IMG/VR virus record: IMGVR_UViG_3300044974_001280
Location: 1 to 64,000 of that record
Reading direction: 5' to 3' (one strand)
Length of the DNA: 64,000 nucleotides
A program made the translations under genes and the position numbers. The notes under the pieces were generated by a model. It was not told the DNA's origin, made no database searches, and saw only the letters and a program-made list of their open reading frames with translations. Below, piece by piece: positions 1 through 62,214 of this stretch (position 1 is its first letter; each line of letters starts with the position of its first letter).

Positions 1-642
1 GGTTCGTCCGGAACCTCTGGTTCGAGTGGATCAAGTGGATCTTCCGGATCTTCGGGTTCTTCTGGATCCTCGGGCTCTTCGGGTTCATCTGGAACTAGAG
101 GGACTTCTGGAACCTCTGGTTCGAGTGGATCAAGTGGATCTTCTGGATCTTCGGGTTCCTCCGGAACAAGAGGAACTTCTGGAACCTCTGGTTCAAGTGG
201 CTCTTCTGGATCATCAGGCTCGTCTGGATCTTCGGGTTCTTCTGGAACATCCGGCTCGAGTGGTTCTTCTGGATCAAGTGGATCTTCGGGATCATCAGGG
301 TCTTCTGGTTCTTCTGGATCGTCAGGTTCTTCAGGAACCTCTGGTTCGAGTGGATCAAGTGGATCATCAGGATCCTCTGGCTCTTCTGGATCTTCGGGCT
401 CTTCAGGTTCATCTGGAACTAGAGGGACTTCTGGAACCTCTGGCTCTTCAGGATCTTCAGGCTCTTCAGGATCATCTGGCTCTTCAGGTTCCTCAGGATC
501 TTCAGGTTCCTCTGGAACTAGAGGGACTTCTGGAACCTCTGGCTCTTCAGGTTCATCTGGCTCTTCAGGGTCTTCAGGCTCTTCAGGTTCATCAGGAACC
601 TCTGGCTCCTCTGGAACCTCTGGTTCATCAGGAACCTCTGGT
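1..642 (+). repeat. 9-bp-period Gly-X-Y repeat (about 71 triplets, X/Y almost all Ser/Thr)
   Basis: GGN codon every third codon, with register kept from 1 to 642. Confidence 0.95.
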
Positions 643-4909: not shown

Positions 4910-4937
4910 GGAACACTCTTGATTAATTGAGATAAAA
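4910..4937 (+). promoter_or_regulatory. Putative ECF-sigma (middle) promoter for the glycosylation cluster
   Basis: GGAAC-N17-ATAAAA, the same layout as 7 other intergenic sites. Confidence 0.55.
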
Positions 4938-7268: not shown

Positions 7269-7303
7269 ATGATGATTTAGATTAAGAAACAATTCTAATT
7301 TTT

Positions 7304-7311
7304 GATATATA
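7304..7311 (+). promoter_or_regulatory. Putative late promoter GATATATA
   Basis: Recurrent motif, 16 nt upstream of the ATG. Confidence 0.7.
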
Positions 7312-12866: not shown

Positions 12867-12874
12867 GATATATA
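12867..12874 (+). promoter_or_regulatory. Putative late promoter GATATATA
   Basis: Recurrent motif upstream of a structural gene. Confidence 0.7.
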
Positions 12875-15459: not shown

Positions 15460-15467
15460 GATATATA
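15460..15467 (+). promoter_or_regulatory. Putative late promoter GATATATA
   Basis: Recurrent motif. Confidence 0.7.
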
Positions 15468-18235: not shown

Positions 18236-18243
18236 GATATATA
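18236..18243 (+). promoter_or_regulatory. Putative late promoter GATATATA
   Basis: Recurrent motif. Confidence 0.7.
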
Positions 18244-21819: not shown

Positions 21820-21827
21820 GATATATA
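21820..21827 (+). promoter_or_regulatory. Putative late promoter GATATATA
   Basis: Recurrent motif. Confidence 0.7.
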
Positions 21828-22987: not shown

Positions 22988-23014
22988 GAAACTTTTCTCT
23001 TTTTCTTTCTATGA
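22988..23014 (+). promoter_or_regulatory. Possible ECF-type promoter
   Basis: GAAAC-N16-CTATGA (weaker -10). Confidence 0.4.
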
Positions 23015-26092: not shown

Positions 26093-26100
26093 TATATTTG
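26093..26100 (+). promoter_or_regulatory. Bacteroidota-type -7 element TAnnTTTG (putative early promoter)
   Basis: TATATTTG upstream of the dCMP deaminase-ECF sigma operon. Confidence 0.6.
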
Positions 26101-26123
26101 CATCTCTTCCCCAATCAATCCTT

Positions 26124-26732
26124 ATGTCAAAATTTCTCAAAATCGTCGGATTCGATGAAGTCTTTTCCGTCCTCCAAAGTCTACCCACTCAGGTTCCCGA
26201 GCACCCCCTGTTTTCTCATTCCTGGGTAGCTAAATTTAATCCTTTTGAATTGATTTTCTTCAATGATATTAACAGCGAAATCGACGAAACTTTTTATCAC
26301 CCTAAAAATATTAAGAACGATCGGGTATATTTAACTATGGCGGAAGTGTGGTCTAAAAATTCTCATTGTCAAAGAATGAAAGTCGGAGCACTTATAGTTA
26401 AAAATAGATCTATTATCTCAGATGGTTATAATGGATCCCCCTCAGGATTTCCCAATCCCTGTGAAGGCCCAGATAATGTCACTTTGCCATACGTTTTACA
26501 TGCCGAAGCAAACGCCATTACTAAACTAGCAAAAAGCACCCAAAGCTGTGAAGACTCAACTCTTTTTGTAACAGTTTCCCCCTGTTACGATTGCTCCAAA
26601 TTGATAATTCAATCCGGAGTAAAAAGATTGGTTTTTAGAGAACTATATCGCAAAACAGAATCCTTGAGTTTTCTCTATCAAGGAGGACTAGAAATTATTC
26701 GTCTTAAAAATCCAACTCTCCCCAATGATTAA
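26124..26732 (+). CDS. cd: dCMP deaminase
   Basis: VGALIV, GYNG, HAEANAI and SPCYDC motifs. Confidence 0.92.
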   Translation: MSKFLKIVGFDEVFSVLQSLPTQVPEHPLFSHSWVAKFNPFELIFFNDINSEIDETFYHPKNIKNDRVYLTMAEVWSKNSHCQRMKVGALIVKNRSIISDGYNGSPSGFPNPCEGPDNVTLPYVLHAEANAITKLAKSTQSCEDSTLFVTVSPCYDCSKLIIQSGVKRLVFRELYRKTESLSFLYQGGLEIIRLKNPTLPND

Positions 26733-27336
26733 AGAAAAAAACATTCAGGTTCTGGCCGAAAATTTTATCTCTCAACGCGACAACAAGACCTTTAAAATTC
26801 TCTACGACAGGATCAGACCTGGTGTTTTGAACCACTGTTACACTATTCTAAAAGACCTCGAGCTGGCAGAGGATGCATTTATGAATTCCATGGCCAAAGT
26901 CTGGGAAAAAATTGAACAGTATGATTTATCAAGAGGTAACTTTTCTACCTGGTGCTACAATATAGCTAGAAACGAATCTCTACTTCTACTTAAAAGCAGA
27001 AAAAAATACATTTCCAAATCTTCGGAAGATTTAGAAATAGATTCCACCCAAAACGAGGAGTCAGGGGGTTTTCATGATGTAGAAACAGATCCTTTATGGC
27101 ATTTCTTCTTCCAAAGTCCAAATATTGATGAACTTTATGATCAGATTGTTGATGAAATTAGAGAGCTCCCAATTCTTTACAAGGACATCATGATAGATAG
27201 AGAGATCAATGGCATGAAATACAAAGATATAGCAGACAAATACGACATTAAAAAAAGATCTATTGCCACAAGAATAAGAAGGGCTCGAACCAAAATCAAG
27301 AACAAGATCGAAAAGTTCAACAAAATGAAGAAATAG
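26725..27336 (+). CDS. ECF-type sigma-70 family RNA polymerase sigma factor
   Basis: Region 2 AEDAF...FSTWCYNIARN; region 4 YKDIA...IATRIRRARTKI. Confidence 0.9.
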   Translation: MIKEKNIQVLAENFISQRDNKTFKILYDRIRPGVLNHCYTILKDLELAEDAFMNSMAKVWEKIEQYDLSRGNFSTWCYNIARNESLLLLKSRKKYISKSSEDLEIDSTQNEESGGFHDVETDPLWHFFFQSPNIDELYDQIVDEIRELPILYKDIMIDREINGMKYKDIADKYDIKKRSIATRIRRARTKIKNKIEKFNKMKK

Positions 27337-27340
27337 TCCT

Positions 27341-27820
27341 ATGAAACATCTGTCAAAAATTTTTGTAATTTTTAGAATCTTTGGAGTGCTAAAGGATCTG
27401 AAGCTTTATTCAGATTTTCTCACCATAGTAAAGAACGAATCTCTCAACTCTCCCCAGTGGAGCAGACTGAAGCTCAGGAGGGATTGGATCGGAAGAATCT
27501 ATACCGTTGTAAATCTTCCTCCTGAAGTAACAATGTCCAGAGATTTTCCTAGAGAAGCCCGACCAGCTTTTGTATTCGAAGAAATCCGGCCCATCAACGA
27601 ATATCTAACGAAGCTGAATCTCCATGAAATCATTACTCCCCTGTTAAAACCAATTCCTGAAACAAATGATGATTCTTTTCTTATCATCTATTCTTTTGTG
27701 TTCAGAGAATTGAGTTGGTTTTGGCTCATTAGATTCTTCATCGAAATTTTTCTATTTATCTGGCTTTATAACCACCTAGATCAAGTAACCCAAATTTTAA
27801 ACCTTAATGCAATTGGATAA
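27341..27820 (+). CDS. Hypothetical membrane-associated protein
   Basis: Hydrophobic C-terminal helix. Confidence 0.6.
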   Translation: MKHLSKIFVIFRIFGVLKDLKLYSDFLTIVKNESLNSPQWSRLKLRRDWIGRIYTVVNLPPEVTMSRDFPREARPAFVFEEIRPINEYLTKLNLHEIITPLLKPIPETNDDSFLIIYSFVFRELSWFWLIRFFIEIFLFIWLYNHLDQVTQILNLNAIG

Positions 27821-28601
27821 ACTGAAGGAAGAGTACCAGCAAAAATTAGATTTTTTTAAAGACCCTAATTTCCTATTTGAAGAAAAAGCTCACGTTTATT
27901 CTTACGAAGGTTCTAAATTTGATTCCGTTACAACCTTTTTAAGGAGATTTAAAACCCCATTCGAAAGAAATTATTGGATTCAAAGAAAAGCACAGGAAAG
28001 AGGAGTAGATCCGTCAGTCATAGATGCGGAATGGACCCAACTGGCCACTCACGCCGCTGCTCTTGGTACCAAAGTACATAAATGGATTGAGGATTTTTGG
28101 TCTGGATTGGAACCAGAGTTACCAGAAAACCCAGAAGAATTACAGAGGGTCAATTCTTTCTTAGATCTATACGAGGCCAGATTATCAAAACTAGTTCCCC
28201 TGGAATCTGAATTGAAAATTTTTTCCAAAAAATGGAGATTAGCTGGAACGATAGATCAACCTTTTTTAATGTGGGACGAAAAGTCGGGTAAGCCTCTTTT
28301 TTTGCTTGGAGACTGGAAAACGAACAAGGATTTCAAAGACGATAATCATCCCAAGGGTAGGTACAAGAAATTGCTCCACCCTTTTGTGGATCTTTTTGAA
28401 AATTCTTTGAATGAATATTCTATCCAGATCAGTCTCTATCGTTTGATTTTAGAAGAAGAACTAGGTATAGAAACTCACAGTGGTTTTTTGGTACATCTAG
28501 GACCAGAAGGGTCAAAAATTTATCAAGTTAAGGATCTTAGGGAGAGACTTAAAGTTTACCTGCAACACAACAGAGAAAACATGGATATTTTCGATGTTTG
28601 A
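27807..28601 (+). CDS. PD-(D/E)XK exonuclease
   Basis: SVTT, GTKVH, E...AGTID...DWKT and QISLY motifs. Confidence 0.85.
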   Translation: MQLDKLKEEYQQKLDFFKDPNFLFEEKAHVYSYEGSKFDSVTTFLRRFKTPFERNYWIQRKAQERGVDPSVIDAEWTQLATHAAALGTKVHKWIEDFWSGLEPELPENPEELQRVNSFLDLYEARLSKLVPLESELKIFSKKWRLAGTIDQPFLMWDEKSGKPLFLLGDWKTNKDFKDDNHPKGRYKKLLHPFVDLFENSLNEYSIQISLYRLILEEELGIETHSGFLVHLGPEGSKIYQVKDLRERLKVYLQHNRENMDIFDV

Positions 28602-28603
28602 TT

Positions 28604-28630
28604 GAAACAAATCCAAACCCAATCGTAAAA
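28604..28630 (+). promoter_or_regulatory. Putative ECF-type promoter
   Basis: GAAAC-N16-GTAAAA. Confidence 0.55.
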
Positions 28631-28645
28631 TAAAAAAAACATAAA

Positions 28646-29158
28646 ATGGCAAAGAAAAAAACAGATACTCTCAAAGGTACCGTTGTCCAATTACAATCTG
28701 AGGATTTAGGAGAAACCATCTTGAATTCCCTTGATCAGGCAAGAATAGAAGCATGTCAAAAAAATCTAGACGAGACAAAAGAAAGAATTTCAAAAAAAGT
28801 CTATGCAGTTAAATTTGATGCTCAGGAGGATTTAAATAGATTTATTGATTTTATTAATAATAAAGCTCAGTGGAAAGAGAAAGAAGCCTTGGGTGTCATT
28901 GAAATCAACAAGGTTTTAGAAAAAGCCCAGCGGGAAGGAATTCAACAAAACGCTCTTTATCTTCAAGCCTTACCTTTAGAAGCCAGCTATTATTTCTTGA
29001 GCAAAATCACGGGTTCTGGTTTGGAGGAAGCTAAAAAATATATTGCTATGCTCAAACCTTTTGACGTAGCACTTAGTTCGGTTAAAGCTGACGCCGTAGA
29101 AATTCAGAATTTAGAGAAAGAATTAGCTGCAGCTCAGCAAGGAATAGAAATCTCCTAG
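28646..29158 (+). CDS. Hypothetical helical protein
   Basis: Clean ORF with an A-rich leader. Confidence 0.7.
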   Translation: MAKKKTDTLKGTVVQLQSEDLGETILNSLDQARIEACQKNLDETKERISKKVYAVKFDAQEDLNRFIDFINNKAQWKEKEALGVIEINKVLEKAQREGIQQNALYLQALPLEASYYFLSKITGSGLEEAKKYIAMLKPFDVALSSVKADAVEIQNLEKELAAAQQGIEIS

Positions 29159-29182
29159 ATCAGAGAAATCTATCCTTCGTCG

Positions 29183-29211
29183 AAAGTCCAGTTCCCAACT
29201 GGACTTTTTTT
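29183..29211 (+). terminator. Intrinsic terminator
   Basis: AAAGTCCAGTT-CCC-AACTGGACTTT stem-loop plus T tract. Confidence 0.85.
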
Positions 29212-29226
29212 GTGAGAAAAAATGTG

Positions 29227-29234
29227 GATATATA
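29227..29234 (+). promoter_or_regulatory. Putative late promoter GATATATA
   Basis: Recurrent motif. Confidence 0.7.
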
Positions 29235-29254
29235 AACAAACTAAAAAAACATTT

Positions 29255-29545
29255 ATGATGCAAAAATTAAAAGAACATTCCTGGCTTATCACAATGTGCC
29301 TATTGTTCTTTGTTTTTTTTAAACAATGCGGAGTTTCCTCCACCTTGAAAAAGACAAACAAGAGGCTGGAATATCTGACTGAAGAAGTGTCAAAATTGAA
29401 GGACACCGTTGCCACTAAACAAGATCTAGAAATTGAAGGGCTTAGAGCAGAAAAAAGAATGATCCAATCAACAGATCGAAGAATGATGGATGTGAACAGA
29501 CAGTCTGAAATAGATTCAAAACTCAAAAATTTAGAAAATAGATGA
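29255..29545 (+). CDS. Membrane-anchored coiled-coil protein (spanin-like candidate)
   Basis: N-terminal TM helix ending KQCG, then coiled coil; ATG 29255 lies after the promoter. Confidence 0.55.
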   Translation: MMQKLKEHSWLITMCLLFFVFFKQCGVSSTLKKTNKRLEYLTEEVSKLKDTVATKQDLEIEGLRAEKRMIQSTDRRMMDVNRQSEIDSKLKNLENR

Positions 29546-30339
29546 ACCAATCTTGGGTCCGAGGGTTTATTATCACAACTTTTGTCTCTTTGTACCTAGT
29601 TGTGTCAATCATCTCGACTATACACGTGATAGATTTTTTCAGACTCTCCAACCCTAATTGGCTGGCAGTTTCGTTGGCTATTGCTTTTGAATTGGGAGCA
29701 GCTGCTTCTTTGGCTTCTTTGATTGCCTTGGATAAAATGAACAAAGCCCTGATTTGGTTTCTTTTTATTCTTCTAACTGCCATGCAGATGATGGGAAACA
29801 CCTACTATGCCTTTACCCATTTGAACGACTACCAAGCTTGGGTTGATCTCTTTGGTCTGAATGAAGAGGACGTCCTTTATCAAAAGCGGTTTCTCTCTAT
29901 CATCAGTGGGGCTATCCTCCCCATCGTGGCTTTAGGATTTATCAAATCTCTGGTCGATTATATTCGTCCGTCTGAAATAAACACCATAGAACAAAAAAGC
30001 GATTTATTATTCACCTCCGAAGAAGTTACTCAGGAAAAAGAGGATCCTACACCCCCCATCGAAACAGAGACCGTCGAAGAAGGAGTAGAAGAAAAAGTCG
30101 AGAAAGTTGACGATATTGTCTTCGACGGGGGCGGCTCTATTTTTGGAAACCCCACACCTCCTGAGCCAGAATCAGAATCCCAAGAAGAACCAAAACCAGA
30201 TGAGATTATTGAAGAGGTACCAGAGGCACCAGAACCCGGTGGAGTTACTTTTATAGAAAATTCTCCGACTTCAATTAATTATGCTAAAGCAAAGTCCTCA
30301 CACCAATCGGTCTACATCGATCCTACAAAAATAATCTAA
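29542..30339 (+). CDS. Multi-TM membrane protein with acidic Pro-rich tail
   Basis: About 4 hydrophobic helices; overlaps the upstream stop. Confidence 0.65.
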   Translation: MNQSWVRGFIITTFVSLYLVVSIISTIHVIDFFRLSNPNWLAVSLAIAFELGAAASLASLIALDKMNKALIWFLFILLTAMQMMGNTYYAFTHLNDYQAWVDLFGLNEEDVLYQKRFLSIISGAILPIVALGFIKSLVDYIRPSEINTIEQKSDLLFTSEEVTQEKEDPTPPIETETVEEGVEEKVEKVDDIVFDGGGSIFGNPTPPEPESESQEEPKPDEIIEEVPEAPEPGGVTFIENSPTSINYAKAKSSHQSVYIDPTKII

Positions 30340-30340
30340 C

Positions 30341-31015
30341 ATGTCTCAAAACTCAATCACCGGCGGAGATCTTGATATTTTTGGTGGTTCTTCTACCAAC
30401 GAATCTCCCCAACCCCTCTTTGGAGAAGGAACTGCTATTTCGGGTTTAGACCCTGGACCTAGTGCTACCTTCGAAACCCGCTATACCTTAATAGCCCTGA
30501 ACCCCAGCGGTCTTGAGAGAGTTAACTTGACATTTTCTGACGTCAATGATCCTAACAACATTCGATTTTATAACACCTCTATGAATGTTGCATGGCAGGA
30601 TGTTACCGAGCAAAAGTTAAATCTAAGCGACTTCTTTTACCCTCTACAAGATTTTTCAGGTTATCAGCAACAGACTTTTGTCATTTCCCCTAATACCTCT
30701 GTTAATTTAGATCAAGGAGATTTCGACACTACCCTTGGGGAGATAGGTCTTTTAATGGCCAGAGCCCAGTTCAATGCTGATGCAGAACCGGAACAACGTC
30801 TTCTATATTGGCAATACGGAGGAGATGACCGTTATATTATGGCAGATTTTATGATGCTAACTGGCCAAGTTAAAAACGGATTTCCTTGGAAGGGCTGGCA
30901 AACAAGTAACAACGTTAGCCAAGAAATAGGCTATACAGGAGCCGCTACTGGTGGATTTATTTTTTCGAATCCGACCGAGTATTCTGTAAAATTAACAATA
31001 TTAACAGCAAGCTAA
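30341..31015 (+). CDS. Hypothetical structural protein, paralog of next gene
   Basis: Shared ending: M.LTG...GW...GG..F.NP...VKL.IL. Confidence 0.65.
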   Translation: MSQNSITGGDLDIFGGSSTNESPQPLFGEGTAISGLDPGPSATFETRYTLIALNPSGLERVNLTFSDVNDPNNIRFYNTSMNVAWQDVTEQKLNLSDFFYPLQDFSGYQQQTFVISPNTSVNLDQGDFDTTLGEIGLLMARAQFNADAEPEQRLLYWQYGGDDRYIMADFMMLTGQVKNGFPWKGWQTSNNVSQEIGYTGAATGGFIFSNPTEYSVKLTILTAS

Positions 31016-31557
31016 TGGCAACTAGACCTATCCCTTGTCCTCCTGCAGTTCCTAATGGCTGGGTTTTTTTTAAGGACCAATTTGTGTTAGAACAAGACTA
31101 CCAATACACCACTTTTTTTAATTTCAAAGATTTGGCTTTTGGAGTTGTAGCATATTCCAGGCTTAGAATTAGTTTAAAAAGAGGCAGATCTGTTAAATTA
31201 AGTCAATCCAATATTGGAACTGAAGGTTTTGTTCGATGGATAGCAGTAAAAGTGCAGTATCCAGCTCCTAAGAATCCTATCCTTTATGCATCTCAAACCC
31301 CAATTATTCCAGGTGTTCCAACTCCTACCAATGGCACACCCCAAATTCAGAAATATATCACCTGGACCTATCAGGGTAGAACTTTAAATCTGGGAGATAT
31401 GATGGTGCTTACAGGTAATCCTTTAGGGTCGACTGATTCTGAAGTTACTGGTTGGAACCTGAGTGAGGATGATTTCCTATTTGCTGGAGGCGGAATTACT
31501 TTCACGAATCCTCATTCAGATTTTGATGTCAAACTAGAAATTTTAGTTGCAAAATGA
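31015..31557 (+). CDS. Hypothetical structural protein, paralog of previous gene
   Basis: As above; coupled by a TAATG overlap. Confidence 0.65.
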   Translation: MATRPIPCPPAVPNGWVFFKDQFVLEQDYQYTTFFNFKDLAFGVVAYSRLRISLKRGRSVKLSQSNIGTEGFVRWIAVKVQYPAPKNPILYASQTPIIPGVPTPTNGTPQIQKYITWTYQGRTLNLGDMMVLTGNPLGSTDSEVTGWNLSEDDFLFAGGGITFTNPHSDFDVKLEILVAK

Positions 31558-31591
31558 ATATATACTAAACAAATTTTCAAGTTTGTCTTTA

Positions 31592-31599
31592 GATATATA
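31592..31599 (+). promoter_or_regulatory. Putative late promoter GATATATA
   Basis: Recurrent motif. Confidence 0.7.
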
Positions 31600-31626
31600 A
31601 AATGTAAAAAAACAAAATAAATCAAA

Positions 31627-34335
31627 ATGGATTTACTCACACAACTCAAAACCCTCAAAGAAAATTCTCAGAATCCTGAGGTTGTTCTTTTTTGCGAAAA
31701 TAGCATCAGGGAGATACAGCAAGGTAACAGCAACCTAAATGAAACAATGCTGTTTGATCAGGTTCAATCTTTGCAAAACACACAGCAGTCAACGGAGAAA
31801 AATCCTTTGGAAATCATTAGAGAGCAAGAAATGTCAACCTCTAAGAATGCTGCCACTAGAATTCTTGAATCATGGGGTGGTATAGGTTCTAAAACTTTCA
31901 AAAGTGCTGGTAGCTATGTCGATGGTGTTGAGGAGAAAAAACAGGTCTCACATCAGAACATCAATGAGGGCATTTCTTCTTTTGCATCTCAAGACGCAGG
32001 AGTAGCTTCTCTGATGAAATCTCAAGAAGTTCACAATCTTGGAATTTTAGAATCCATTTTGAGCCTTAAGGATGCAGGAATCTTCGAGCATCCTTCTGTT
32101 AAGATCCTGGCAGAAAGATACTATCATTTGTTGAAAGGGAAAAATCTGCCTGAATTTATTATAGCAGAATCTTTTCTTGGAGAACTAGGTAACTTCAACT
32201 GGGATCAGGACGTTAAACGGATGTACGAAGGTATTTCGAATAAAATTTCTAATTTGAGACCTGAAATCGAAGTGGCCAAAGCTTTGTACGCAATCAGTCA
32301 AAATGGAACACCTGATTTTTACTCTCCAGTAACAGAATCTCTGAACAAATGGCTGGTGTCTGAAAACAAATCGATTTCTCTACTTTCTCAAGAGATTTCT
32401 AGATGGCAGTTCAATCCTATTGTTAAAAATCTCCTAAACAATCTTTCTCTGATGGAAAGTACAAGCCGTCAGCTTCATGTTCCTGTTAGTTCTGGTAACA
32501 GTGAAGTGAGTAAAGTTTATTCTCCTGTTTTTGTAGAAGGTGGAAAAACCCTATTTGTTCTGGGCAAAAATGTTTTCGAAGCAACTTCAAATGGAATTTC
32601 AAAGCTCAGACACGGTCAAATAGCTTCTCTGCCAAACCGGTATCTGTCCTTGTTAGAGTCCTATGCTAATTTGAACACCAAGGCTGATGAAAAAGGTCTT
32701 TCGATTTACTTAGGCAAAACCAGAATTCTTTTGGTGGAAGAGAGCGAAAAAACTTCGGTTTACTTCGGTGGTAAGAAATTGAACTTCTCTGACTATAATC
32801 AATTTGCTCGAATTCTGTCGATTGAGATGAGCAAAACTTTGGGTCTCAACGAGAACAAGATCATCAGAGACGTTATCAATATCTATGAGAATTTCAGTAG
32901 CATCGTGGAATTGGATTTCGCCAAAACTATTTCTTCTAAATTGTATGAAGGTGCCGCAGTACATTTGATGAAATGGGACGGTAAGATCTATTTGAACAAG
33001 ATCAACGAGTCAATGAGAGAAGATTCTTTCTATGTTGTGAATGGCAATCAGGCTACATCAATGGTGAAAGAATTCTTGAAATATGATATTTCTGAAGGTC
33101 TCACTCAATTTTTAGATGGTGAGAATAGAGTTAAATCTGTTATGATGAACGATAGAAAAGTTCTGATGGAGAATATAGCTCTAGTTGAAACTCAGATCCA
33201 GAAGATTGAGAACCAGATGTCAAAAAGTCCTTTGTTTGCAAATTCTCAAGAAATGCAAAATGCCAAATACCTCTTAGAAAGAGAGCTTGGAATTCTGAGA
33301 CAGAAATGGTCGGTTGTGAATGAAGAAATTAAGAAAATTGAATCTGCTCCAGATCCAATTCATAACATGAACGAGGACGATGATTTCAATGTGGGGGAAT
33401 ACGTAAAGGTGAAAGAATCAGGCAACACGGGTAAAATCATTTCTATCAACGGTTCATCTGGTTCCTATACTGTCTTAATGGACAACGGCAGAACTGGAGA
33501 ATTTAGATTGGATGAAATCATCAATCTAGACGATGCGCTGGCTGCCGCTGGTGACGAGAACGAAGCCGAAGCAGAAACCCAAGAAGAATTGAAAGAAGGA
33601 ACTCAGCCTTTAGCATCGGCTCCAGGTTCGTCAAAAACGGGTAAATTAGACAAATCTGTTGCTGCCACTATGAGAAAAAGTACCACAAAAGCTCCTGCAG
33701 GTTCTCATCAAAACGAAGCTGGAAAAAAGGACATTGAAGATCTGGATGACGCCAATCTAGAAGAAGCACCAGCAGGTCAAAAACTAACAAAATATAAGGC
33801 TTACAAAAAAGCTGGATATAACCTGGCTGAATCTAAAGGCACAGGTAAATCCACTTCAGCCCCAGAAACCAGTTGGGAATCAGCAAAGGCAAAGGAAATG
33901 AATCTGGCAGTTGCCCCAGGTAAAACAAACTATGACTCCAGTTATTTCTACAAGACAAAAGTCACTCAAGGGGAATCTAAGAATCCCGAAGTGATGAAAA
34001 CGGACCCCAATTTTGCTGCTGCTCCAGGTACTCAAGGAGCTGGTAAAGATCTGAAGTACAGAGTCAGCTCGGAGATGGGTTACAACGTAGATGAAATGGC
34101 GGAGATCGAAAAGACCAATCAAGAGTTGGCAAAAGCCCCTGGTCCTATTGGAACATACGGCAAAAAATTCGGCGCCAGAACCATCCACGGAAAACCAGGT
34201 AAACCCGAGGTCATGAACATCGATCCTAATTTTGCTAATGCCCCAGGAATGAACTCAAAAGGTGAAGTTGATTACGATCTAAATGACGAAATGGGTTACA
34301 ATCTGGACGAAAGCCAGGAGTCAAAAAAAAACTGA
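31627..34335 (+). CDS. Large probable prohead core/internal protein with a KOW/SH3-like domain and C-terminal APG...GYN repeats
   Basis: Many (L/I)NE-type protease sites; FNVGEYVKV...GKII; repeated APG and GYN(L/V) motifs. Confidence 0.6.
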   Translation: MDLLTQLKTLKENSQNPEVVLFCENSIREIQQGNSNLNETMLFDQVQSLQNTQQSTEKNPLEIIREQEMSTSKNAATRILESWGGIGSKTFKSAGSYVDGVEEKKQVSHQNINEGISSFASQDAGVASLMKSQEVHNLGILESILSLKDAGIFEHPSVKILAERYYHLLKGKNLPEFIIAESFLGELGNFNWDQDVKRMYEGISNKISNLRPEIEVAKALYAISQNGTPDFYSPVTESLNKWLVSENKSISLLSQEISRWQFNPIVKNLLNNLSLMESTSRQLHVPVSSGNSEVSKVYSPVFVEGGKTLFVLGKNVFEATSNGISKLRHGQIASLPNRYLSLLESYANLNTKADEKGLSIYLGKTRILLVEESEKTSVYFGGKKLNFSDYNQFARILSIEMSKTLGLNENKIIRDVINIYENFSSIVELDFAKTISSKLYEGAAVHLMKWDGKIYLNKINESMREDSFYVVNGNQATSMVKEFLKYDISEGLTQFLDGENRVKSVMMNDRKVLMENIALVETQIQKIENQMSKSPLFANSQEMQNAKYLLERELGILRQKWSVVNEEIKKIESAPDPIHNMNEDDDFNVGEYVKVKESGNTGKIISINGSSGSYTVLMDNGRTGEFRLDEIINLDDALAAAGDENEAEAETQEELKEGTQPLASAPGSSKTGKLDKSVAATMRKSTTKAPAGSHQNEAGKKDIEDLDDANLEEAPAGQKLTKYKAYKKAGYNLAESKGTGKSTSAPETSWESAKAKEMNLAVAPGKTNYDSSYFYKTKVTQGESKNPEVMKTDPNFAAAPGTQGAGKDLKYRVSSEMGYNVDEMAEIEKTNQELAKAPGPIGTYGKKFGARTIHGKPGKPEVMNIDPNFANAPGMNSKGEVDYDLNDEMGYNLDESQESKKN

Positions 34336-34508
34336 AAAAAATCCTGAGCCGAGTTTGGTCTTTCGCTCCTTCCAGCCCGGATCAAAACGACAAGCCTAAG
34401 CCTTTTGTGGTAGACTACAAAAAAGGCATGAGCTTTGCCCCCACCGGCAAGAATGAGGGTGAAAACCTCATCTCTGATGAGGATGGTGATTTTTCAGAAA
34501 AAGAATAA
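34329..34508 (+). CDS. Putative -1 frameshift extension (59 codons) of the 902 aa protein
   Basis: Slippery A_AAA_AAC precedes the TGA; the -1 frame is open with SFAP motifs and ends at TAA 34506-34508. Confidence 0.55.
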   Translation, partial: KLKKILSRVWSFAPSSPDQNDKPKPFVVDYKKGMSFAPTGKNEGENLISDEDGDFSEKE

Positions 34509-34511
34509 ATG

Positions 34512-34539
34512 GGAACTTTTCTAATTTTAGTTGATATAA
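34512..34539 (+). promoter_or_regulatory. Putative ECF-type promoter for the late sigma gene
   Basis: GGAAC-N17-ATATAA, overlapping a GATATAAA late-like site. Confidence 0.5.
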
Positions 34540-34563
34540 AAAAAACAAGATATGTTTTTTTAA

Positions 34564-34923
34564 ATGTCGAAGATCTATGTAACTAATCAAAATCTGATGG
34601 AGGCAATTCTTGAATCTAAAGAGAAGGGAGAATTAACACCAGCAGCCATAGAAATGTTCACTCTGATGATCTCGGGCATTTCTAAAAAAATGTCTTATAA
34701 GGATCCTGATGATAAAGATGATTGTATGGCTTTTGCCATGGAGGATCTTTGCAAATATTGGAATAGATTCGACCCAGAAAAATCCAACAATCCTTTTTCC
34801 TATTACACCCAAATAGCCAAAAATGGGTTTGCAAAAGGCTGGAAAAAAATACATCCCCCCAAATCACCTAAGACTATTCCTTTTTCTCACATCACGGGAG
34901 AAGATAATTCTTATAATGTGTAA
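34564..34923 (+). CDS. gp55: Late-transcription sigma factor (T4 gp55-like), minimal
   Basis: YVTN...FDPEKSNNPFSYYTQIA motif. Confidence 0.85.
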   Translation: MSKIYVTNQNLMEAILESKEKGELTPAAIEMFTLMISGISKKMSYKDPDDKDDCMAFAMEDLCKYWNRFDPEKSNNPFSYYTQIAKNGFAKGWKKIHPPKSPKTIPFSHITGEDNSYNV

Positions 34924-35405
34924 TGACTGATATCAAAAAAATCAAGCCAAATGGCAATTTTAAATCTGGCGTATTTGCCCCTTTAAATCCAGAAAAATAC
35001 ATCGGAGATATCAATAACATCATTTGCAGATCAAGCTGGGAATACAGGTTCTGTAAATACTGTGATTCGAATCCACTGATTTTAAAATGGTCTTCTGAGC
35101 CCCTGCCAATTCCTTACTACAACCCTTTAGATCAGAAAGATCATAAATATCATGTTGACTTTTACATGAGGGTCCAGCAGGAAAACGGGGAACAGCAGGA
35201 ATGGCTTATCGAGGTAAAGCCCCAGAGACAGCACGAAAAACCAGTTTTCGAAGGAAGCAAAACCAACGAAAAATTGAAATCCTACAACGATAAGATGAAA
35301 GTCTGGATCACCAATCAGGCTAAATTTAAAGCGGCAAAAATCTGGGCAGAAGCGAGAGGAATGAAATTTGGAGTAGTAAACGAGAATTTCCTATTTAACA
35401 AGTAA
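34923..35405 (+). CDS. gp4: Head completion nuclease (T4 gp4-like)
   Basis: NPEKYIGD, RSSWE, WSSE..IPY, Y.VDF, IEVKP and NQAK motifs. Confidence 0.9.
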   Translation: MTDIKKIKPNGNFKSGVFAPLNPEKYIGDINNIICRSSWEYRFCKYCDSNPLILKWSSEPLPIPYYNPLDQKDHKYHVDFYMRVQQENGEQQEWLIEVKPQRQHEKPVFEGSKTNEKLKSYNDKMKVWITNQAKFKAAKIWAEARGMKFGVVNENFLFNK

Positions 35406-35440: not shown

Positions 35441-35448
35441 GATATATA
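35441..35448 (+). promoter_or_regulatory. Putative late promoter GATATATA
   Basis: Recurrent motif. Confidence 0.7.
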
Positions 35449-35506
35449 CTTGCTGTAAATCGAAATAAAATTCACGTCGGTGGTAAAAAGGAGGAATAGT
35501 TTCTAA

Positions 35507-37111
35507 ATGGCAGGTTTTAGCGAGAATCCAAACACCAATCCAATCTTTCAGAAGATTAGGGATTCGGTTAAAAATCTGAGTAATTTCGGGATCCGATATG
35601 GTGACATGGTTGTCAAAAATTCTCAGGCTATTGGGGCCACTGAAGCTGAATTTTTGAAAAAAGGACCTATTGAGGATGAAACCACCTTCTTTTCTTTAGG
35701 TCGCCAAGACACAACCACCAGGCAGTATATTTCTTATTTTGATAAAGACTATGCGGGAAAAAGAGATTATCTGAGAAAATTCTCTTTGAACCCTGAGATA
35801 GAATACATTTTAGACACTGTCTGTGATGAATCTATTACTTACGATTCTTATAATTTCTTTGCCTATCCAGCTTTTCTGAACCTATCTAATCTTAAAAAGT
35901 CCGTTATCGATCGCATCGATTCGACTTATAAGAAACTGTATGACATGTTCGGTTTCAACGATGACATTTCGGCCTGGCAGTATTTCAGGCAAATGCTGGT
36001 GGATGGATTTATTGCCTTTGAGATTGTCTTTGATGATAGCGGCAGAAACATCATCGGATTTAAAGAGCTAGATGCCACGACCCTCATGCCTTCTGTGGAA
36101 AAACAGAAAGACGGAACTTTTTTGAATGTTTGGTATCAATACCCTAAAGATGAAAGAAAAAGAAGAATGTTGTACGACTCTCAGGTCATCTACATTTCTT
36201 ACGCCAAAGGCAATTCTATTTCTAGAGTTAGCTACACAGAAAGACTGATTAGACCTTACAATGTCTTGAGAATTATCGAATACACCAGAGTTATTTGGTC
36301 GGTCATGAATGCTTCTTTTAGGATGAAGATGACCATTCCGGTGGGATCTAGATCCCAACAGAAAGCAATGCAAACTCTGGGAGAATTGATGTCTATCTAC
36401 AAAGAGGACATCCAGTTTAACGACGAGAGTGGAGAACTTTCTGTTAACGGCCAACCCAAGATTCAGTTCTATAAGAACTATCTAATGCCCAAAGGAGCAG
36501 GAGGCACCCCTTCTATTGAGCCTCTAAACACGGCAGGCCCCAATCTGAATGATCCTGCCCCATTAGCCTATTTTTTCGATAAATTAGTGCAGGAATCAAA
36601 AATTCCTTTTTCCCGGTTTCAGGGGCCTGATGGCGGATCTATTGGAAAATACGCTAATGCTGCCGAAGGTTTAGATAAAGAAGAAATCAGATTCTCTAAA
36701 TTTATTATGAGGCTTAGATCTGTATTTCAGGATATCCTGGTTAAGCCTCTATGGATTCAAATCTGTAAAGATTTTCCCCAACTAGAAAAGGATTACACTT
36801 TTAAATCCCAATTAGGTCTAAGCTATGTTTCAGATAACCCCTTCCGGGTTAACCAGGAGATTGAAACCATTACGAAGAGAAAAGAATTTATAGATTCTCT
36901 TTATACCCTCACCGACGAGGAAGGAAATCCTTTCTTTTCTATCTCATATCTAGTGGAAAACTACATGGGTCTTACTGAGGATGATATAGCTTCTAATAAA
37001 AAAGCCAGAAGTGATAACAAATTAAAATCTGCTGAAGAAGCTGCGGCTGCCAGCGCATCTCCGCCAGCGGGCGAGTCCGAGCCAGAAGTAGCACCAGAAA
37101 CCCCAGTATAA
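35507..37111 (+). CDS. Portal protein (gp20-like), paralog 1
   Basis: EIEYILDTVCDE, WQYFRQMLVDG, SY.ERLIRPYN.LR, KIPFSRF and EEIRF.KFI.RLR motifs. Confidence 0.85.
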   Translation: MAGFSENPNTNPIFQKIRDSVKNLSNFGIRYGDMVVKNSQAIGATEAEFLKKGPIEDETTFFSLGRQDTTTRQYISYFDKDYAGKRDYLRKFSLNPEIEYILDTVCDESITYDSYNFFAYPAFLNLSNLKKSVIDRIDSTYKKLYDMFGFNDDISAWQYFRQMLVDGFIAFEIVFDDSGRNIIGFKELDATTLMPSVEKQKDGTFLNVWYQYPKDERKRRMLYDSQVIYISYAKGNSISRVSYTERLIRPYNVLRIIEYTRVIWSVMNASFRMKMTIPVGSRSQQKAMQTLGELMSIYKEDIQFNDESGELSVNGQPKIQFYKNYLMPKGAGGTPSIEPLNTAGPNLNDPAPLAYFFDKLVQESKIPFSRFQGPDGGSIGKYANAAEGLDKEEIRFSKFIMRLRSVFQDILVKPLWIQICKDFPQLEKDYTFKSQLGLSYVSDNPFRVNQEIETITKRKEFIDSLYTLTDEEGNPFFSISYLVENYMGLTEDDIASNKKARSDNKLKSAEEAAAASASPPAGESEPEVAPETPV

Positions 37112-39780: not shown

Positions 39781-39788
39781 TACATTTA
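39781..39788 (+). promoter_or_regulatory. Near-consensus Bacteroidota -7 element (TACATTTA)
   Basis: One mismatch to TAnnTTTG; ends 5 nt before the ATG. Confidence 0.35.
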
Positions 39789-41133: not shown

Positions 41134-41161
41134 GAAACAAATCTTTGACTTTTTTGTAAAA
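41134..41161 (+). promoter_or_regulatory. Putative ECF-type promoter
   Basis: GAAAC-N17-GTAAAA. Confidence 0.6.
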
Positions 41162-44176: not shown

Positions 44177-44588
44177 GCTAGTTAAATCGGTTTTTAAATC
44201 CGACGAAGAGTGGAAAAAGGTGCCAAGAAGTGTGAAGACAAAACATTTTTTCATGGTTAATAGAATTATGTCCATCCAGTTTCCGATTCATGCCCATCTA
44301 TTTAACCACTCCAAGATCGAAATGGTGCCAGTAGTGGATTGGTGGCACGGATTTTTATGCAATGCTTTTAAAAAACCACCCACCTGGATCTATACAACTG
44401 GACCTAAAAAAAATGCGGTTCAGGCAGTAGAGAAAAATCATGACACAGAAGAATTCATTAGAACCAAATACGAATTAAGCTCCAGGGATCTGAAACAGCT
44501 CCAGACCTTTTACCCTGAATCTTACTCCCAGTGGATGGACTCAATCTCTGACCAATTGGGAAGAAATAAAAAACAATCGGATATATAA
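44163..44588 (+). CDS. Possible clamp loader small subunit (gp62-like)
   Basis: FMVNRIMS resembles the gp62 core; near gp44. Confidence 0.4.
   Translation: MDLFELVKSVFKSDEEWKKVPRSVKTKHFFMVNRIMSIQFPIHAHLFNHSKIEMVPVVDWWHGFLCNAFKKPPTWIYTTGPKKNAVQAVEKNHDTEEFIRTKYELSSRDLKQLQTFYPESYSQWMDSISDQLGRNKKQSDI
44580..44587 (+). promoter_or_regulatory. Putative late promoter GATATATA
   Basis: Recurrent motif. Confidence 0.65.
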
Positions 44589-45635: not shown

Positions 45636-45663
45636 GAAACTTTTTGTTCATCTTCCTGTAAAA
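45636..45663 (+). promoter_or_regulatory. Putative ECF-type promoter
   Basis: GAAAC-N17-GTAAAA. Confidence 0.6.
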
Positions 45664-48148: not shown

Positions 48149-48183
48149 ACTGGTTTAGATATATACTCTAAACCAGTTTTTTT
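48149..48183 (+). terminator. Intrinsic terminator whose stem/loop contains a GATATATA late motif
   Basis: ACTGGTTTAGA-TATATAC-TCTAAACCAGT plus T run; GATATATA at 48158-48165. Confidence 0.8.
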
Positions 48184-48888
48184 GTGGCCTACATTTCAGA
48201 TTTTGAAAATTTTCTTCTAGTTGAATCCGATTCAACTTCCCAGCCTGTTTTTAACGGGATCTGGGATCCTATGGTAGACGGAAAGGGAAAAAGACACTGG
48301 AGGTTGAATGTGTTAGTCTTATCCAAACTCAAAAAGATAGCAGAGGAGGCTCACGATCACTGCCGGGGGAATTTCCAAACTGAATTAAAGGATGTGGTTC
48401 TACTGTGTCCTGCTAATTTTACGAATTCCGAGGACGATCTGGATCTGGTTCTGCTCGTGGAAAAAAGAGGGAATTTAAAAAAAGGATCCAGATCAGAAAT
48501 GGAAGACCAAATGAACGAACATCTCTCTGACTACGTGGCTGAAAAAAACCCCCGTCTTAGAGGCAAAGAGGTGGAGATAGAAGCTTCTACATCCGATTAC
48601 TTTCCTAAAAGGCTAGGAGTTTATTCACTTTTTGACAACAAGTGGCTCCAATCACCTCCCTCTGATCAGGATTTAGATTTTGTGGGGGTATCAGTCAAAA
48701 AAATTATCGGAGCAATCAAAAAACTAGATTCTTCTTCTTTATCAGAGACCCCCCGAAAAAAAATTCAGAAAATATCCAGACAGATCCAGAGACTCAAAAG
48801 ATCCGGTCCAACTGGCATAGGGTCCTACAATCATCTGTTGTCGGGTGGATATATACACAAAATAATGGATCTCCTTTCCAAAAAATAA
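48184..48888 (+). CDS. Degenerate nucleotidyltransferase-like protein with CTS-like N-terminus
   Basis: MAYISDFENF; DVVLL...AN...DDLDL...GVYSL..NKW pattern but lacking the GS motif. Confidence 0.5.
   Translation: MAYISDFENFLLVESDSTSQPVFNGIWDPMVDGKGKRHWRLNVLVLSKLKKIAEEAHDHCRGNFQTELKDVVLLCPANFTNSEDDLDLVLLVEKRGNLKKGSRSEMEDQMNEHLSDYVAEKNPRLRGKEVEIEASTSDYFPKRLGVYSLFDNKWLQSPPSDQDLDFVGVSVKKIIGAIKKLDSSSLSETPRKKIQKISRQIQRLKRSGPTGIGSYNHLLSGGYIHKIMDLLSKK
48848..48855 (+). promoter_or_regulatory. Putative late promoter GATATATA (inside upstream CDS)
   Basis: Recurrent motif, about 40 nt before ATG 48896. Confidence 0.55.
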
Positions 48889-51430: not shown

Positions 51431-51438
51431 GATATATA
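51431..51438 (+). promoter_or_regulatory. Putative late promoter GATATATA
   Basis: Recurrent motif. Confidence 0.7.
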
Positions 51439-55331: not shown

Positions 55332-55339
55332 GATATATA
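55332..55339 (+). promoter_or_regulatory. Putative late promoter GATATATA
   Basis: Recurrent motif. Confidence 0.7.
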
Positions 55340-62206: not shown

Positions 62207-62214
62207 GATATATA
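62207..62214 (+). promoter_or_regulatory. Putative late promoter GATATATA
   Basis: Recurrent motif. Confidence 0.7.

What the first reader, a model, noticed from the sequence alone, without database searches (positions are those of the whole stretch)
26093..34923. Three-tier sigma cascade readable from the sequence
Seen: the operon carrying the ECF sigma is preceded by host-type TATATTTG (26093). The gp55-like late sigma gene is preceded by GGAAC-N17-ATATAA (34512), an ECF-like layout. Structural genes carry GATATATA. Known: T4 uses MotA/AsiA for middle transcription and gp55 for late, and ECF promoters typically have an AAC-containing -35. Inference: host sigma drives the phage ECF sigma, which drives gp55, so an SPO1-like sigma cascade runs on a T4-like chassis.
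Basis: partly seen in the sequence, partly recalled or inferred. Interest (0 to 1): 0.75.

Follow-up and report, generated by a model that had tools for sequence, protein, structure and literature searches.

The report
Three-sigma relay in Bacteroidota jumbo phage
An uncultured 230-kb T4-related freshwater phage carries three conserved promoter types arranged so that the host sigma factor should switch on a phage ECF sigma, which switches on DNA-replication genes and a gp55-like late sigma, which switches on virion and lysis genes. This replaces T4's MotA/AsiA step with a second phage sigma.

Summary
All three motifs sit at the stated coordinates, and each belongs to a non-random, strand-specific promoter class that is conserved in related phages.

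- **Context.** The window is the first 64 kb of a 230,445-bp IMG/VR phage contig. Its nearest named relatives are Lak megaphages, LR756500, and Tenacibaculum, Flavobacterium and Chryseobacterium phages, so the host is probably Bacteroidota.
- **Sigma genes.** The contig has only two: an ECF-type sigma (26725-27336) and a 119-aa gp55-like sigma (34564-34923).
- **Late class.** GATATATA is the top intergenic 8-mer. It lies before neck, sheath, tube, portal, protease and endolysin genes, and before 41 of 43 distinct portal upstream regions in relatives.
- **Middle class.** GRAAC-N16-18-TAnAA lies before gp55, gp32, both topoisomerase II subunits, the clamp loader, a gp47-like exonuclease and RNA ligase genes. 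It is kept upstream of the three genes tested in relatives (gp55, gp32, one topoisomerase II subunit) although the spacers differ.
- **Early class.** TATATTTG matches the Bacteroidota sigma-A -7 box. It precedes the conserved four-gene operon (dCMP deaminase, ECF sigma, p159, exonuclease) and several small early-type genes.
- **Missing parts.** No MotA, AsiA, gp33 or gp45 homolog was found.

The cascade reading is well supported by sequence and comparison. Start sites, timing and the sigma-to-promoter assignments remain untested.

The parts
26093..26100 (+). Host-type (Bacteroidota sigma-A) -7 box TATATTTG. Predicted start site is near 26105.
   Evidence: Read. Conserved before the orthologous operon in relatives. 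The -7 box spans -12 to -5 in Flavobacterium (PMC9723704).
26124..26732 (+). dCMP deaminase, first gene of the ECF operon.
   Evidence: Pfam PF00383 E 3.5e-23 and phrog_174 E 6e-54.
26725..27336 (+). ECF-type (group IV) sigma factor, 203 aa. Overlaps the deaminase gene by 8 nt.
   Evidence: Sigma70_r2 and r4_2 both above Pfam cut-offs. TIGR02937 above its cut-off, and the best subfamily is the Bacteroides-type TIGR02985. Aligns end to end with SigW and sigma-E.
27341..27820 (+). p159, a conserved protein with hydrophobic N- and C-terminal helices, directly after the sigma gene. Function unknown.
   Evidence: Present in the same position in 80 of 80 related loci. Confident model with pLDDT 86 but no fold match.
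27807..28601 (+). PD-(D/E)XK exonuclease, last gene of the operon.
   Evidence: phrog_298 E 6.4e-32.
28604..28630 (+). Middle-type promoter, GAAAC-N17-TAAAA, before the 170-aa gene at 28646-29158.
29186..29211 (+). Terminator-like hairpin (8-bp stem, 3-nt loop) followed by T7. It closes the early/middle block.
   Evidence: Read directly. The terminator scan did not list it.
29227..29234 (+). Late promoter GATATATA.
31592..31599 (+). Late promoter GATATATA before the 902-aa gene at 31627-34335.
   Evidence: All 11 distinct upstream sequences recovered for the gene's relatives also carry the motif.
34512..34539 (+). Middle-type promoter of the late-sigma gene: GGAAC at 34512-34516, 17-nt spacer, ATATAA at 34534-34539.
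   Evidence: The two-block motif is conserved before gp55 homologs. It scores 6.3 bits on the late PWM against a minimum of 11.4 for the 47 late sites.
34564..34923 (+). gp55-like minimal late sigma, 119 aa.
   Evidence: phrog_234 E 1.4e-14. T4 gp55 27% identity over 117 aa, E 5e-8.
34923..35405 (+). gp4-like head-completion gene, start overlapping the sigma gene's stop.
   Evidence: phrog_218 E 4.8e-46.
35441..35448 (+). Late promoter GATATATA before the portal gene at 35507-37111.
   Evidence: Found in 41 of 43 distinct relatives' upstream regions.
39781..39788 (+). Host-type -7 box TACATTTA, ending 5 nt before the DNA ligase ATG. This predicts a leaderless start.
41134..41161 (+). Middle-type promoter before the clamp-loader gene at 41176.
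45636..45663 (+). Middle-type promoter before the endonuclease-like gene at 45670.
22988..23014 (+). Middle-type promoter, GAAAC-N16-CTATGA, before the gene at 23074 of unknown function.
4910..4937 (+). Candidate middle-type promoter before the gene at 4943.
7304..7311 (+). Late promoter GATATATA, with GAAAC 13 nt upstream (a hybrid site).
12867..12874 (+). Late promoter before a neck-type gene.
15460..15467 (+). Late promoter.
18236..18243 (+). Late promoter at the start of the tail-sheath gene.
21820..21827 (+). Late promoter before the tail-tube gene.
44580..44587 (+). Late promoter.
48158..48165 (+). Late promoter.
48848..48855 (+). Late promoter.
51431..51438 (+). Late promoter before the prohead protease gene.
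55332..55339 (+). Late promoter.
62207..62214 (+). Late promoter.

Best explanation
The phage runs its gene expression as a relay of three sigma factors on the host core RNA polymerase.

1. **Early.** The host primary sigma reads Bacteroidota-type -7 boxes (TATATTTG and close variants). This transcribes small early genes and the four-gene operon of dCMP deaminase, ECF sigma, p159 and exonuclease.
2. **Middle.** The phage ECF sigma has a region 2 and a region 4. It reads two-block promoters, GRAAC at -35 and (C/G)TA(T/A)AA at -10, 16-18 nt apart. These stand before replication, repair and nucleotide-metabolism genes and before the gp55-like sigma gene.
3. **Late.** The gp55-like sigma has only a region-2-like domain. 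It reads the -10-only element GATATATA before virion and lysis genes.

What is shown: the two sigma genes, the three motif classes, their orientation and distance to genes, their association with gene function, and their conservation in relatives. What is inferred: which sigma reads which class, and the order in time.
For: **Sigma genes.** Only two sigma genes occur in 230 kb.

**Late class.**
- GATATATA is the top non-coding 8-mer, with 38 copies on the + strand and 9 on the - strand. Most lie 12-75 nt upstream of a gene on the same strand.
- An EM search found the motif in about 38% of 122 upstream regions.
- Three near-complete relatives show the same strand-skewed counts: 37:8, 40:8 and 35:8.
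- It stands before neck, sheath, tube, portal, protease and three endolysin-like genes.

**Middle class.**
- G[GA]AAC[TC]T occurs 16 times in intergenic DNA on the + strand, 15 of them 34-86 nt before a gene start, and never on the - strand.
- The two-block pattern occurs 40 times on + and 18 on -, against 21±5 expected. Fifteen copies lie directly upstream of genes.
- Downstream genes include gp55, gp32, both topoisomerase II subunits, the clamp loader, a gp47-like exonuclease and RNA ligase 2. A looser GAAACTT site lies before RNA ligase 1.
- No middle site stands before a structural or lysis gene. Fisher p = 0.001 for class against function.
- In relatives the two conserved blocks persist over different spacers.

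**Match between the ECF sigma and the middle motif.**
- Its nearest solved homologs are SigW and sigma-E.
- From my own knowledge, the -35 boxes of those two sigmas are TGAAAC and GGAACTT.
- The recognition helix SIATRIRRAR aligns with SigW TVKTRIHRGR.

**Early class.** It is conserved before the ECF operon. Two sites end exactly 5 nt before an ATG, which fits the known position of the -7 box (PMC9723704).

**Alternatives absent.** No MotA or AsiA was found. E. coli-type sigma-70 promoters are not enriched.
Against: - There are no start-site or time-course data. Metatranscriptome contigs cover gp32 but do not resolve 5' ends, and one contig bridges both gp32 promoters.
- The host is inferred, not known. 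The tmRNA 3' end gave no clear host.
- Generic TAnnTTTG is not enriched in this genome, and the -33 spacing at 26093 is atypical.
- The middle -10 lacks the CGT typical of ECF promoters.
- More distant relatives that also carry an ECF-like sigma (Lak, LR756500) show no GRAAC before gp55. The link therefore holds only within this family.
- The gp55-like protein lacks the C-terminal third of T4 gp55, and no gp33 or gp45 was detected.
- Some late-motif genes are nucleotide-metabolism genes.
Confidence: 0.66

Rival explanations
1. The GRAAC-N17-TAnAA promoters are read by a host factor rather than by the phage ECF sigma. This could be a host ECF sigma, or host sigma-A redirected by an unrecognised phage activator in the manner of T4 MotA/AsiA. 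The phage ECF sigma would then act elsewhere, for example on host genes.
For: No experiment links the phage sigma to the motif. Bacteroidota encode many ECF sigmas of the same subfamily as the phage protein. Lak and LR756500 have an ECF-like sigma but no GRAAC before gp55.
Against: The motif and the phage sigma co-occur throughout the family. The -35 box matches those of the sigma's nearest characterised homologs (plus established knowledge). No MotA or AsiA is present. A phage relying on a stress-gated host ECF sigma for its replication genes would be fragile.
Confidence: 0.15
2. The cascade is looser than three tiers. The gp55 gene and several others are driven by hybrid promoters in which one AT-rich -10 serves both the ECF sigma and gp55. 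Late sigma synthesis would then be partly self-reinforcing rather than strictly ECF-dependent.
For: In this genome the gp55 -10 (GATATAA) is one base away from the late motif. GRAAC lies 13-17 nt upstream of a late-type 8-mer at 7286, 133035, 173231 and 224884 as well. In this genome and in several relatives (10 of 53 distinct upstream sequences), gp32 carries a late promoter immediately upstream of its middle promoter.
Against: The gp55 site scores 6.3 bits on the late PWM, against at least 11.4 for all 47 late sites. In most relatives the gp55 -10 is CTAAAA or CTAAGA, which is not late-like. No relative has GATATATA before gp55 (0 of 41).
Confidence: 0.12
3. The motifs are not promoters. They could be chance AT-rich words, RNA-processing sites or terminator parts.
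For: Intergenic DNA here is AT-rich. A zero-order EM search drifts to A/T runs.
Against: The motifs show strong strand specificity, fixed distance to gene starts, enrichment over dinucleotide shuffles, and conservation in relatives amid divergent flanks.
Confidence: 0.03

Closest known systems
Bacillus phage SPO1 sigma cascade (host sigma-A, then gp28, then gp33/gp34)
   Same: The logic is the same. An early gene read by the host sigma encodes a phage sigma for middle genes, and a middle gene encodes the late sigma. All act on host core polymerase.
   Different: The proteins are unrelated in detail. Here the middle sigma is a bona fide ECF-type protein and the late sigma is a T4 gp55 homolog. 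The virion and replisome are of the T4 superfamily, and the host is probably Bacteroidota.
Phage T4 late transcription (gp55 with gp33 and the gp45 clamp; promoter TATAAATA)
   Same: The late sigma is a gp55 homolog. The late promoter is an 8-bp AT-rich -10-only element before virion genes. gp32 has both a middle and a late promoter.
   Different: The motif is GATATATA, and TATAAATA is not enriched. The protein has 119 aa against 185 and lacks the C-terminal part. No gp33 or gp45 was detected.
Phage T4 middle transcription (MotA/AsiA sigma appropriation)
   Same: It serves the same gene set: replication, recombination, nucleotide metabolism and gene 55. It also has a box near -30/-35 plus a -10.
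   Different: No MotA or AsiA is present. A complete alternative sigma is encoded instead.
phiEco32 gp36, an ECF-family phage sigma
   Same: It is a phage-encoded ECF-family sigma that drives non-early phage genes (PMC4281155).
   Different: gp36 promoters are a single element, tAATGTATAtA, without a -35, and they serve both middle and late genes of a podovirus. Here the motif has two blocks and a separate late sigma exists.
Group 2.2 jumbo phages of Iyer et al. 2021 (Lak, PTm1)
   Same: This is the same broad clade. That paper notes that these phages carry a minimal sigma and a more complete sigma (PMC7824862).
   Different: That paper describes no promoters, targets or cascade.

Membership tests
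ECF (group IV) sigma-70 family | Only regions 2 and 4, about 200 aa, matching curated ECF models. | tested here: met
   PF04542 47 bits (cut-off 24), PF08281 38.7 bits (cut-off 25.7), and no other sigma-domain family among the hits. TIGR02937 66.7 bits (cut-off 42.9). Full-length alignment to SigW and sigma-E.
ECF (group IV) sigma-70 family | Cognate promoters with AAC in the -35 box and CGT in the -10 box. | tested here: inconclusive
   The candidate class has GRAAC at -35. Its -10 is (C/G)TA(T/A)AA, not CGT. The assignment to this sigma is an inference.
ECF (group IV) sigma-70 family | Co-transcribed anti-sigma partner. | tested here: inconclusive
   A conserved protein with hydrophobic terminal helices (p159) follows the sigma gene in 80 of 80 loci. 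Its model matches no anti-sigma or any other known fold.
T4 gp55 late sigma family | Sequence homology to gp55; a single region-2-like domain. | tested here: met
   phrog_234 E 1.4e-14. BLASTP to T4 gp55 E 5e-8. Sigma70_r2 22.1 bits, just under the cut-off of 24.
T4 gp55 late sigma family | -10-only late promoter with consensus TATAAATA. | tested here: not met
   The architecture is met: an 8-bp element with no conserved -35. The sequence is GATATATA. TATAAATA counts are 1 sense against 2.1 expected.
T4 gp55 late sigma family | Works with the gp33 co-activator and gp45 clamp; C-terminal clamp-binding tail. | tested here: inconclusive
   No hit for T4 gp33, PF09116 or PF02916. The alignment with T4 gp55 stops at T4 residue 126 of 185. 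The contig is 85% complete and these proteins diverge fast.
T4 MotA/AsiA middle mode | AsiA and MotA proteins. | tested here: not met
   PF09010, PF09114 and PF09158 gave no match at E<=10.
Bacteroidota sigma-A promoter | -7 box TAnnTTTG at -12 to -5. | tested here: met
   TATATTTG at 26093, conserved in relatives. Distances to ATGs fit the known position (PMC9723704).
Bacteroidota sigma-A promoter | -33 box TTTG about 19-21 nt upstream. | tested here: not met
   At 26093 the nearest TTTG is 26 nt upstream. Only 192844 has TTTG-N19. Relatives have a T-run instead.
SPO1-type phage sigma cascade | Each tier's sigma gene carries only the previous tier's promoter; the tiers are temporally ordered. 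| tested here: inconclusive
   The promoter wiring is met. Temporal order cannot be tested with these tools, and the metatranscriptome contigs gave no 5' ends.

The most novel reading that the evidence does not exclude
A large, widespread lineage of T4-superfamily jumbo phages of Bacteroidota has replaced sigma appropriation with a captured host-type ECF sigma as its middle-gene switch. The lineage comprises hundreds of environmental contigs, and the runs found for this contig are freshwater. The always-adjacent protein p159, which has hydrophobic terminal helices and a fold with no known match, would be a new kind of anti-sigma or timer that gates the switch. Hybrid GRAAC/late promoters would give the gp55-like sigma positive feedback.
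Probability: 0.12. Interest if true: 0.8.

Novelty: new variant of a known kind. Interest (0 to 1): 0.6.

Why it matters
How T4-superfamily phages outside the Enterobacteria time their middle genes is largely unknown, because most of them lack MotA and AsiA. This family offers a concrete, testable answer: a complete ECF sigma with a readable two-block promoter.

The family includes more than 190 ECF-bearing and 260 gp55-bearing IMG/VR contigs. One member is transcribed in freshwater metatranscriptomes.

The finding also yields three orthogonal promoter/sigma sets that may be useful as genetic parts in Bacteroidota. In addition, it gives a rule for classifying early, middle and late genes in uncultured relatives from sequence alone.

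Tried and rejected
- **Near-identical DNA in GenBank phages.** None was found.
- **Zero-order EM after masking the late motif.** It drifted to A/T runs and was not used.
- **Unbiased dyad search.** It was dominated by A-tracts. Only GAAAC-N17-TATA stood out, with 5 of 5 copies upstream of genes.
- **Generic TAnnTTTG and TTTG-N17-21-TAnnTTTG.** Neither is enriched.
- **E. coli-type sigma-70 promoters.** Not enriched.
- **RNA evidence.** The ECF-gp55 stretch is barely present in RNA runs. gp32 is well covered in four freshwater metatranscriptomes, but only as assembled contigs, so no start sites could be read.
- **Distant relatives.** Lak-B5, LR756500, MA9V-2 and PAU show no GRAAC before gp55. 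This is uninformative about the sigma-motif link.
- **gp33, gp45, AsiA and MotA searches.** All were empty.
- **p159 as an anti-sigma.** There is no family, atlas or fold match. The idea is neither supported nor excluded.
- **Host from the tmRNA 3' end.** It gave two unrelated genomes.
- **The gp55 promoter as a true late promoter.** Rejected on PWM score and on the relatives' sequences.
Full report
**What the window is.** The 64-kb window is the first part of a single 230,445-bp IMG/VR virus contig. The contig is linear, CheckV rates it 85% complete, and its GC content is 39.8%. A home-made gene caller puts about 93% of genes on the + strand.

The gene content is that of the T4 superfamily:
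- Virion genes: tail sheath and tube, neck, gp4-like head completion, portal, prohead protease and a gp23-type capsid protein.
- Replication and repair genes: DNA ligase, clamp loader, gp32, both topoisomerase II subunits, RNA ligases 1 and 2, and a gp47-like exonuclease.

No near-identical DNA exists among GenBank phages. By protein similarity the closest named relatives are:
- LR756500 (462 kb) and the Prevotella Lak megaphages;
- Tenacibaculum phages PTm1 and PTm5, and Flavobacterium phage MaF61;
- for the late sigma, Chryseobacterium phages MA9V-1 and MA9V-2.

Three things point to a Bacteroidota host, which remains an inference:
- these relatives infect Bacteroidota;
- by my reading of the upstream sequences, there are no evident Shine-Dalgarno sequences and the leaders are A-rich;
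- the ECF sigma's best subfamily model is Bacteroides-type.

The sequencing runs that hold the phage are freshwater.

**The observation.**
- The gene at 26725-27336 has sigma regions 2 and 4 above Pfam's cut-offs. It passes NCBIfam's sigma70-ECF model and aligns over its full length with SigW and sigma-E.
- The gene at 34564-34923 is a 119-aa homolog of T4 gp55.
- A whole-contig search finds no other sigma region 2.

**Late class.** GATATATA is the most enriched non-coding 8-mer. It has 38 copies on the + strand, 29 of them non-coding, and 9 on the - strand. Most copies lie 12-75 nt upstream of a gene on the same strand.
- An EM search returns gGATATATAA in about 38% of 122 upstream regions.
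- Against dinucleotide shuffles of 128 oriented intergenic segments, [GA]ATATATA occurs 42 times in sense orientation. Shuffles give 3.5±1.9, and the antisense count is 10.
- No conserved -35 accompanies it (consensus).
- Downstream genes include neck, sheath, tube, portal, prohead protease and three endolysin-like genes. They also include a MazG-like and a kinase-like gene.
- GATATATA stands before the portal gene in 41 of 43 distinct upstream sequences from relatives. The background is 3.2% of random 120-nt windows.
- Three near-complete relatives show the same strand-skewed counts.
- T4's own TATAAATA is not enriched.

**Middle class.** G[GA]AAC[TC]T occurs 103 times on the + strand. Sixteen of these are intergenic, 15 of them 34-86 nt before a gene start. 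None of the 68 copies on the - strand is intergenic.
- Anchoring on GRAAC reveals a second block, (C/G)TA(T/A)AA, 16-18 nt downstream.
- The pattern G[GA]AAC-N16-18-TA.A[AG] was chosen from the relatives' promoters. It occurs 40 times on + and 18 on -, against a third-order Markov expectation of 21±5. Fifteen copies lie directly upstream of genes.
- Genes with a two-block or GRAACTT-type site upstream: the gp55-like sigma, gp32, both topoisomerase II subunits, the clamp loader, a gp47-like exonuclease, RNA ligases 1 and 2, a thymidylate-synthase-like gene, an endonuclease-like gene and several unknowns.
- None is a structural or lysis gene. Among annotated genes, promoter class against function gives Fisher p = 0.001.

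The comparative evidence is the strongest support for this class.
- Among 41 distinct upstream sequences of gp55 homologs, 35 contain GRAAC and 28 contain the full two-block pattern, against a background of 3.5%. None contains the late or host motif.
- The spacer sequences fall into several unrelated groups, so the two blocks are what is conserved.
- The same holds for gp32 (49 of 53 with GRAAC, 34 with the two-block pattern) and for one topoisomerase II subunit (8 of 11).

**Early class.** TATATTTG matches the Bacteroidota sigma-A -7 box TAnnTTTG, which lies at -12 to -5 in Flavobacterium (PMC9723704).
- In this genome the exact word occurs 5 times in sense intergenic DNA, against 0.93±0.85 in shuffles and 0 antisense. 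The slightly relaxed TA[TC]ATTT[GA] occurs 14 times against 3.8±1.9.
- The sites precede the ECF operon, DNA ligase, one topoisomerase gene, RNA ligase 1, and small genes of unknown function concentrated at 189-229 kb.
- Two sites end exactly 5 nt before an ATG, which is where a leaderless start would fall.
- The generic TAnnTTTG is not enriched, and the -33 TTTG is mostly missing, so the own-genome signal is moderate.
- The comparative signal is strong. The deaminase-ECF gene pair is present in 80 of 80 related loci. TATATT lies 18-38 nt before the operon's ATG in 36 of 40 distinct sequences, as exact TATATTTG in 24, with divergent flanks.

**Wiring.**
- In the 70-nt gap before its first ATG, the ECF operon carries only the host-type element.
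- The late-sigma gene carries only the middle-type element. Its -10 in this genome (GATATAA) resembles the late motif, but it scores 6.3 bits on the late PWM against at least 11.4 for all 47 late sites. In most relatives it is CTAAAA or CTAAGA.
- Virion genes carry only the late element.
- Several replication genes carry two classes. One topoisomerase subunit and RNA ligase 1 have early plus middle elements. gp32 has middle plus late.
- From my own knowledge, this pattern recalls T4.
- MotA and AsiA are absent.

**Which sigma reads what (inference).**
- A two-block promoter with a 16-18-nt spacer and AAC in the -35 box is the ECF layout.
- From established knowledge, the -35 boxes of SigW and sigma-E, the sigma's nearest solved homologs, are TGAAAC and GGAACTT.
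- The recognition helix is conserved with SigW.
- A -10-only AT-rich octamer is the gp55 layout.

**Weak points.**
- The middle -10 lacks CGT.
- The gp55-like protein lacks the C-terminal third of T4 gp55, and no gp33 or gp45 was found.
- Lak and LR756500 have a distant ECF-like sigma but no GRAAC before gp55.

**Direct expression data.** Four freshwater metatranscriptomes contain gp32 of this very phage at 99% identity or more. One contig ends at the terminator after gp32. Only assembled contigs are available, and one spans both promoters, so no start site can be read.

**Prior knowledge.**
- Iyer et al. 2021 noted that this group of jumbo phages encodes a minimal and a more complete sigma, but described no promoters or cascade (PMC7824862).
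- An ECF-family phage sigma is known from phiEco32. Its promoter is a single element and it has no separate late sigma (PMC4281155).
- Full-text searches found no description of an ECF-driven middle tier in a T4-type phage.

**Verdict.** It is a new variant of known kinds: SPO1-like logic, a T4-like late sigma and an ECF-type middle sigma. It extends to a large uncultured phage family. Start sites, timing and the sigma-to-promoter assignments need experiments.

Noticed in passing
window 35507-37111 and 37117-38742: Two tandem portal-protein paralogs. Both match phrog_213 (E about 1e-59) and they are 52% identical to each other.
   Followed up: partly
window about 35455-35475; relatives in L013-L092: A block resembling ATAGATCGAAATTAAA lies 6-25 nt downstream of the portal late promoter. 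It is conserved across the distinct relatives examined, and may be a leader RNA element or operator.
   Followed up: no
window 34280-34508: The 902-aa ORF ends in an A-run at about 34325-34345, and a second frame stays open to 34508 without a nearby ATG. Relatives keep a 64-74-codon ORF at the same spot, ending just before the gp55 promoter. It could be a small gene or a frameshift product.
   Followed up: partly
window 27341-27820: p159 follows the ECF sigma in 80 of 80 related loci. Its model is confident (pLDDT 86): a long N-terminal helix, a small alpha/beta domain and two C-terminal hydrophobic helices. It has no fold match in PDB or AFDB clusters.
   Followed up: yes
L009:8897-9336 (genome 168897-169336): A phage-encoded tmRNA (Rfam RF00023, 72 bits), which ARAGORN missed. 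Its tag ends in ALAA. An AATATATA late-type box ends 7 nt before its 5' end, and a middle-type promoter follows its terminator.
   Followed up: partly
L011:2612-2743 (genome 202612-202743): A 132-nt tRNA-like gene with an internal insertion (RF00005, 31.5 bits). ARAGORN did not call it.
   Followed up: no
genome 147039-149948, minus strand (L008): Three tandem genes each have a nearly identical late promoter plus leader, GATATATA followed by the same 25 nt or so. The one scanned matches only unknown-function PHROGs.
   Followed up: no
L013-L092, upstream of gp55 homologs: In many relatives the spacer of the gp55 promoter holds the perfect palindrome AACCTCGAGGTT. In another subgroup an 11-bp inverted repeat brackets the -10 and is followed by a T-run. 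This could be an operator, or a terminator overlapping the promoter.
   Followed up: no
L007:224-1563 (genome 120224-121563): Transcripts of this phage's gp32 gene, at 99% identity or more, occur in four independent freshwater metatranscriptome runs.
   Followed up: yes
window 1-4878: The contig opens inside long Gly/Ser-rich repeat coding sequence (GGTTC/GGATC units), including a 1384-aa ORF.
   Followed up: no
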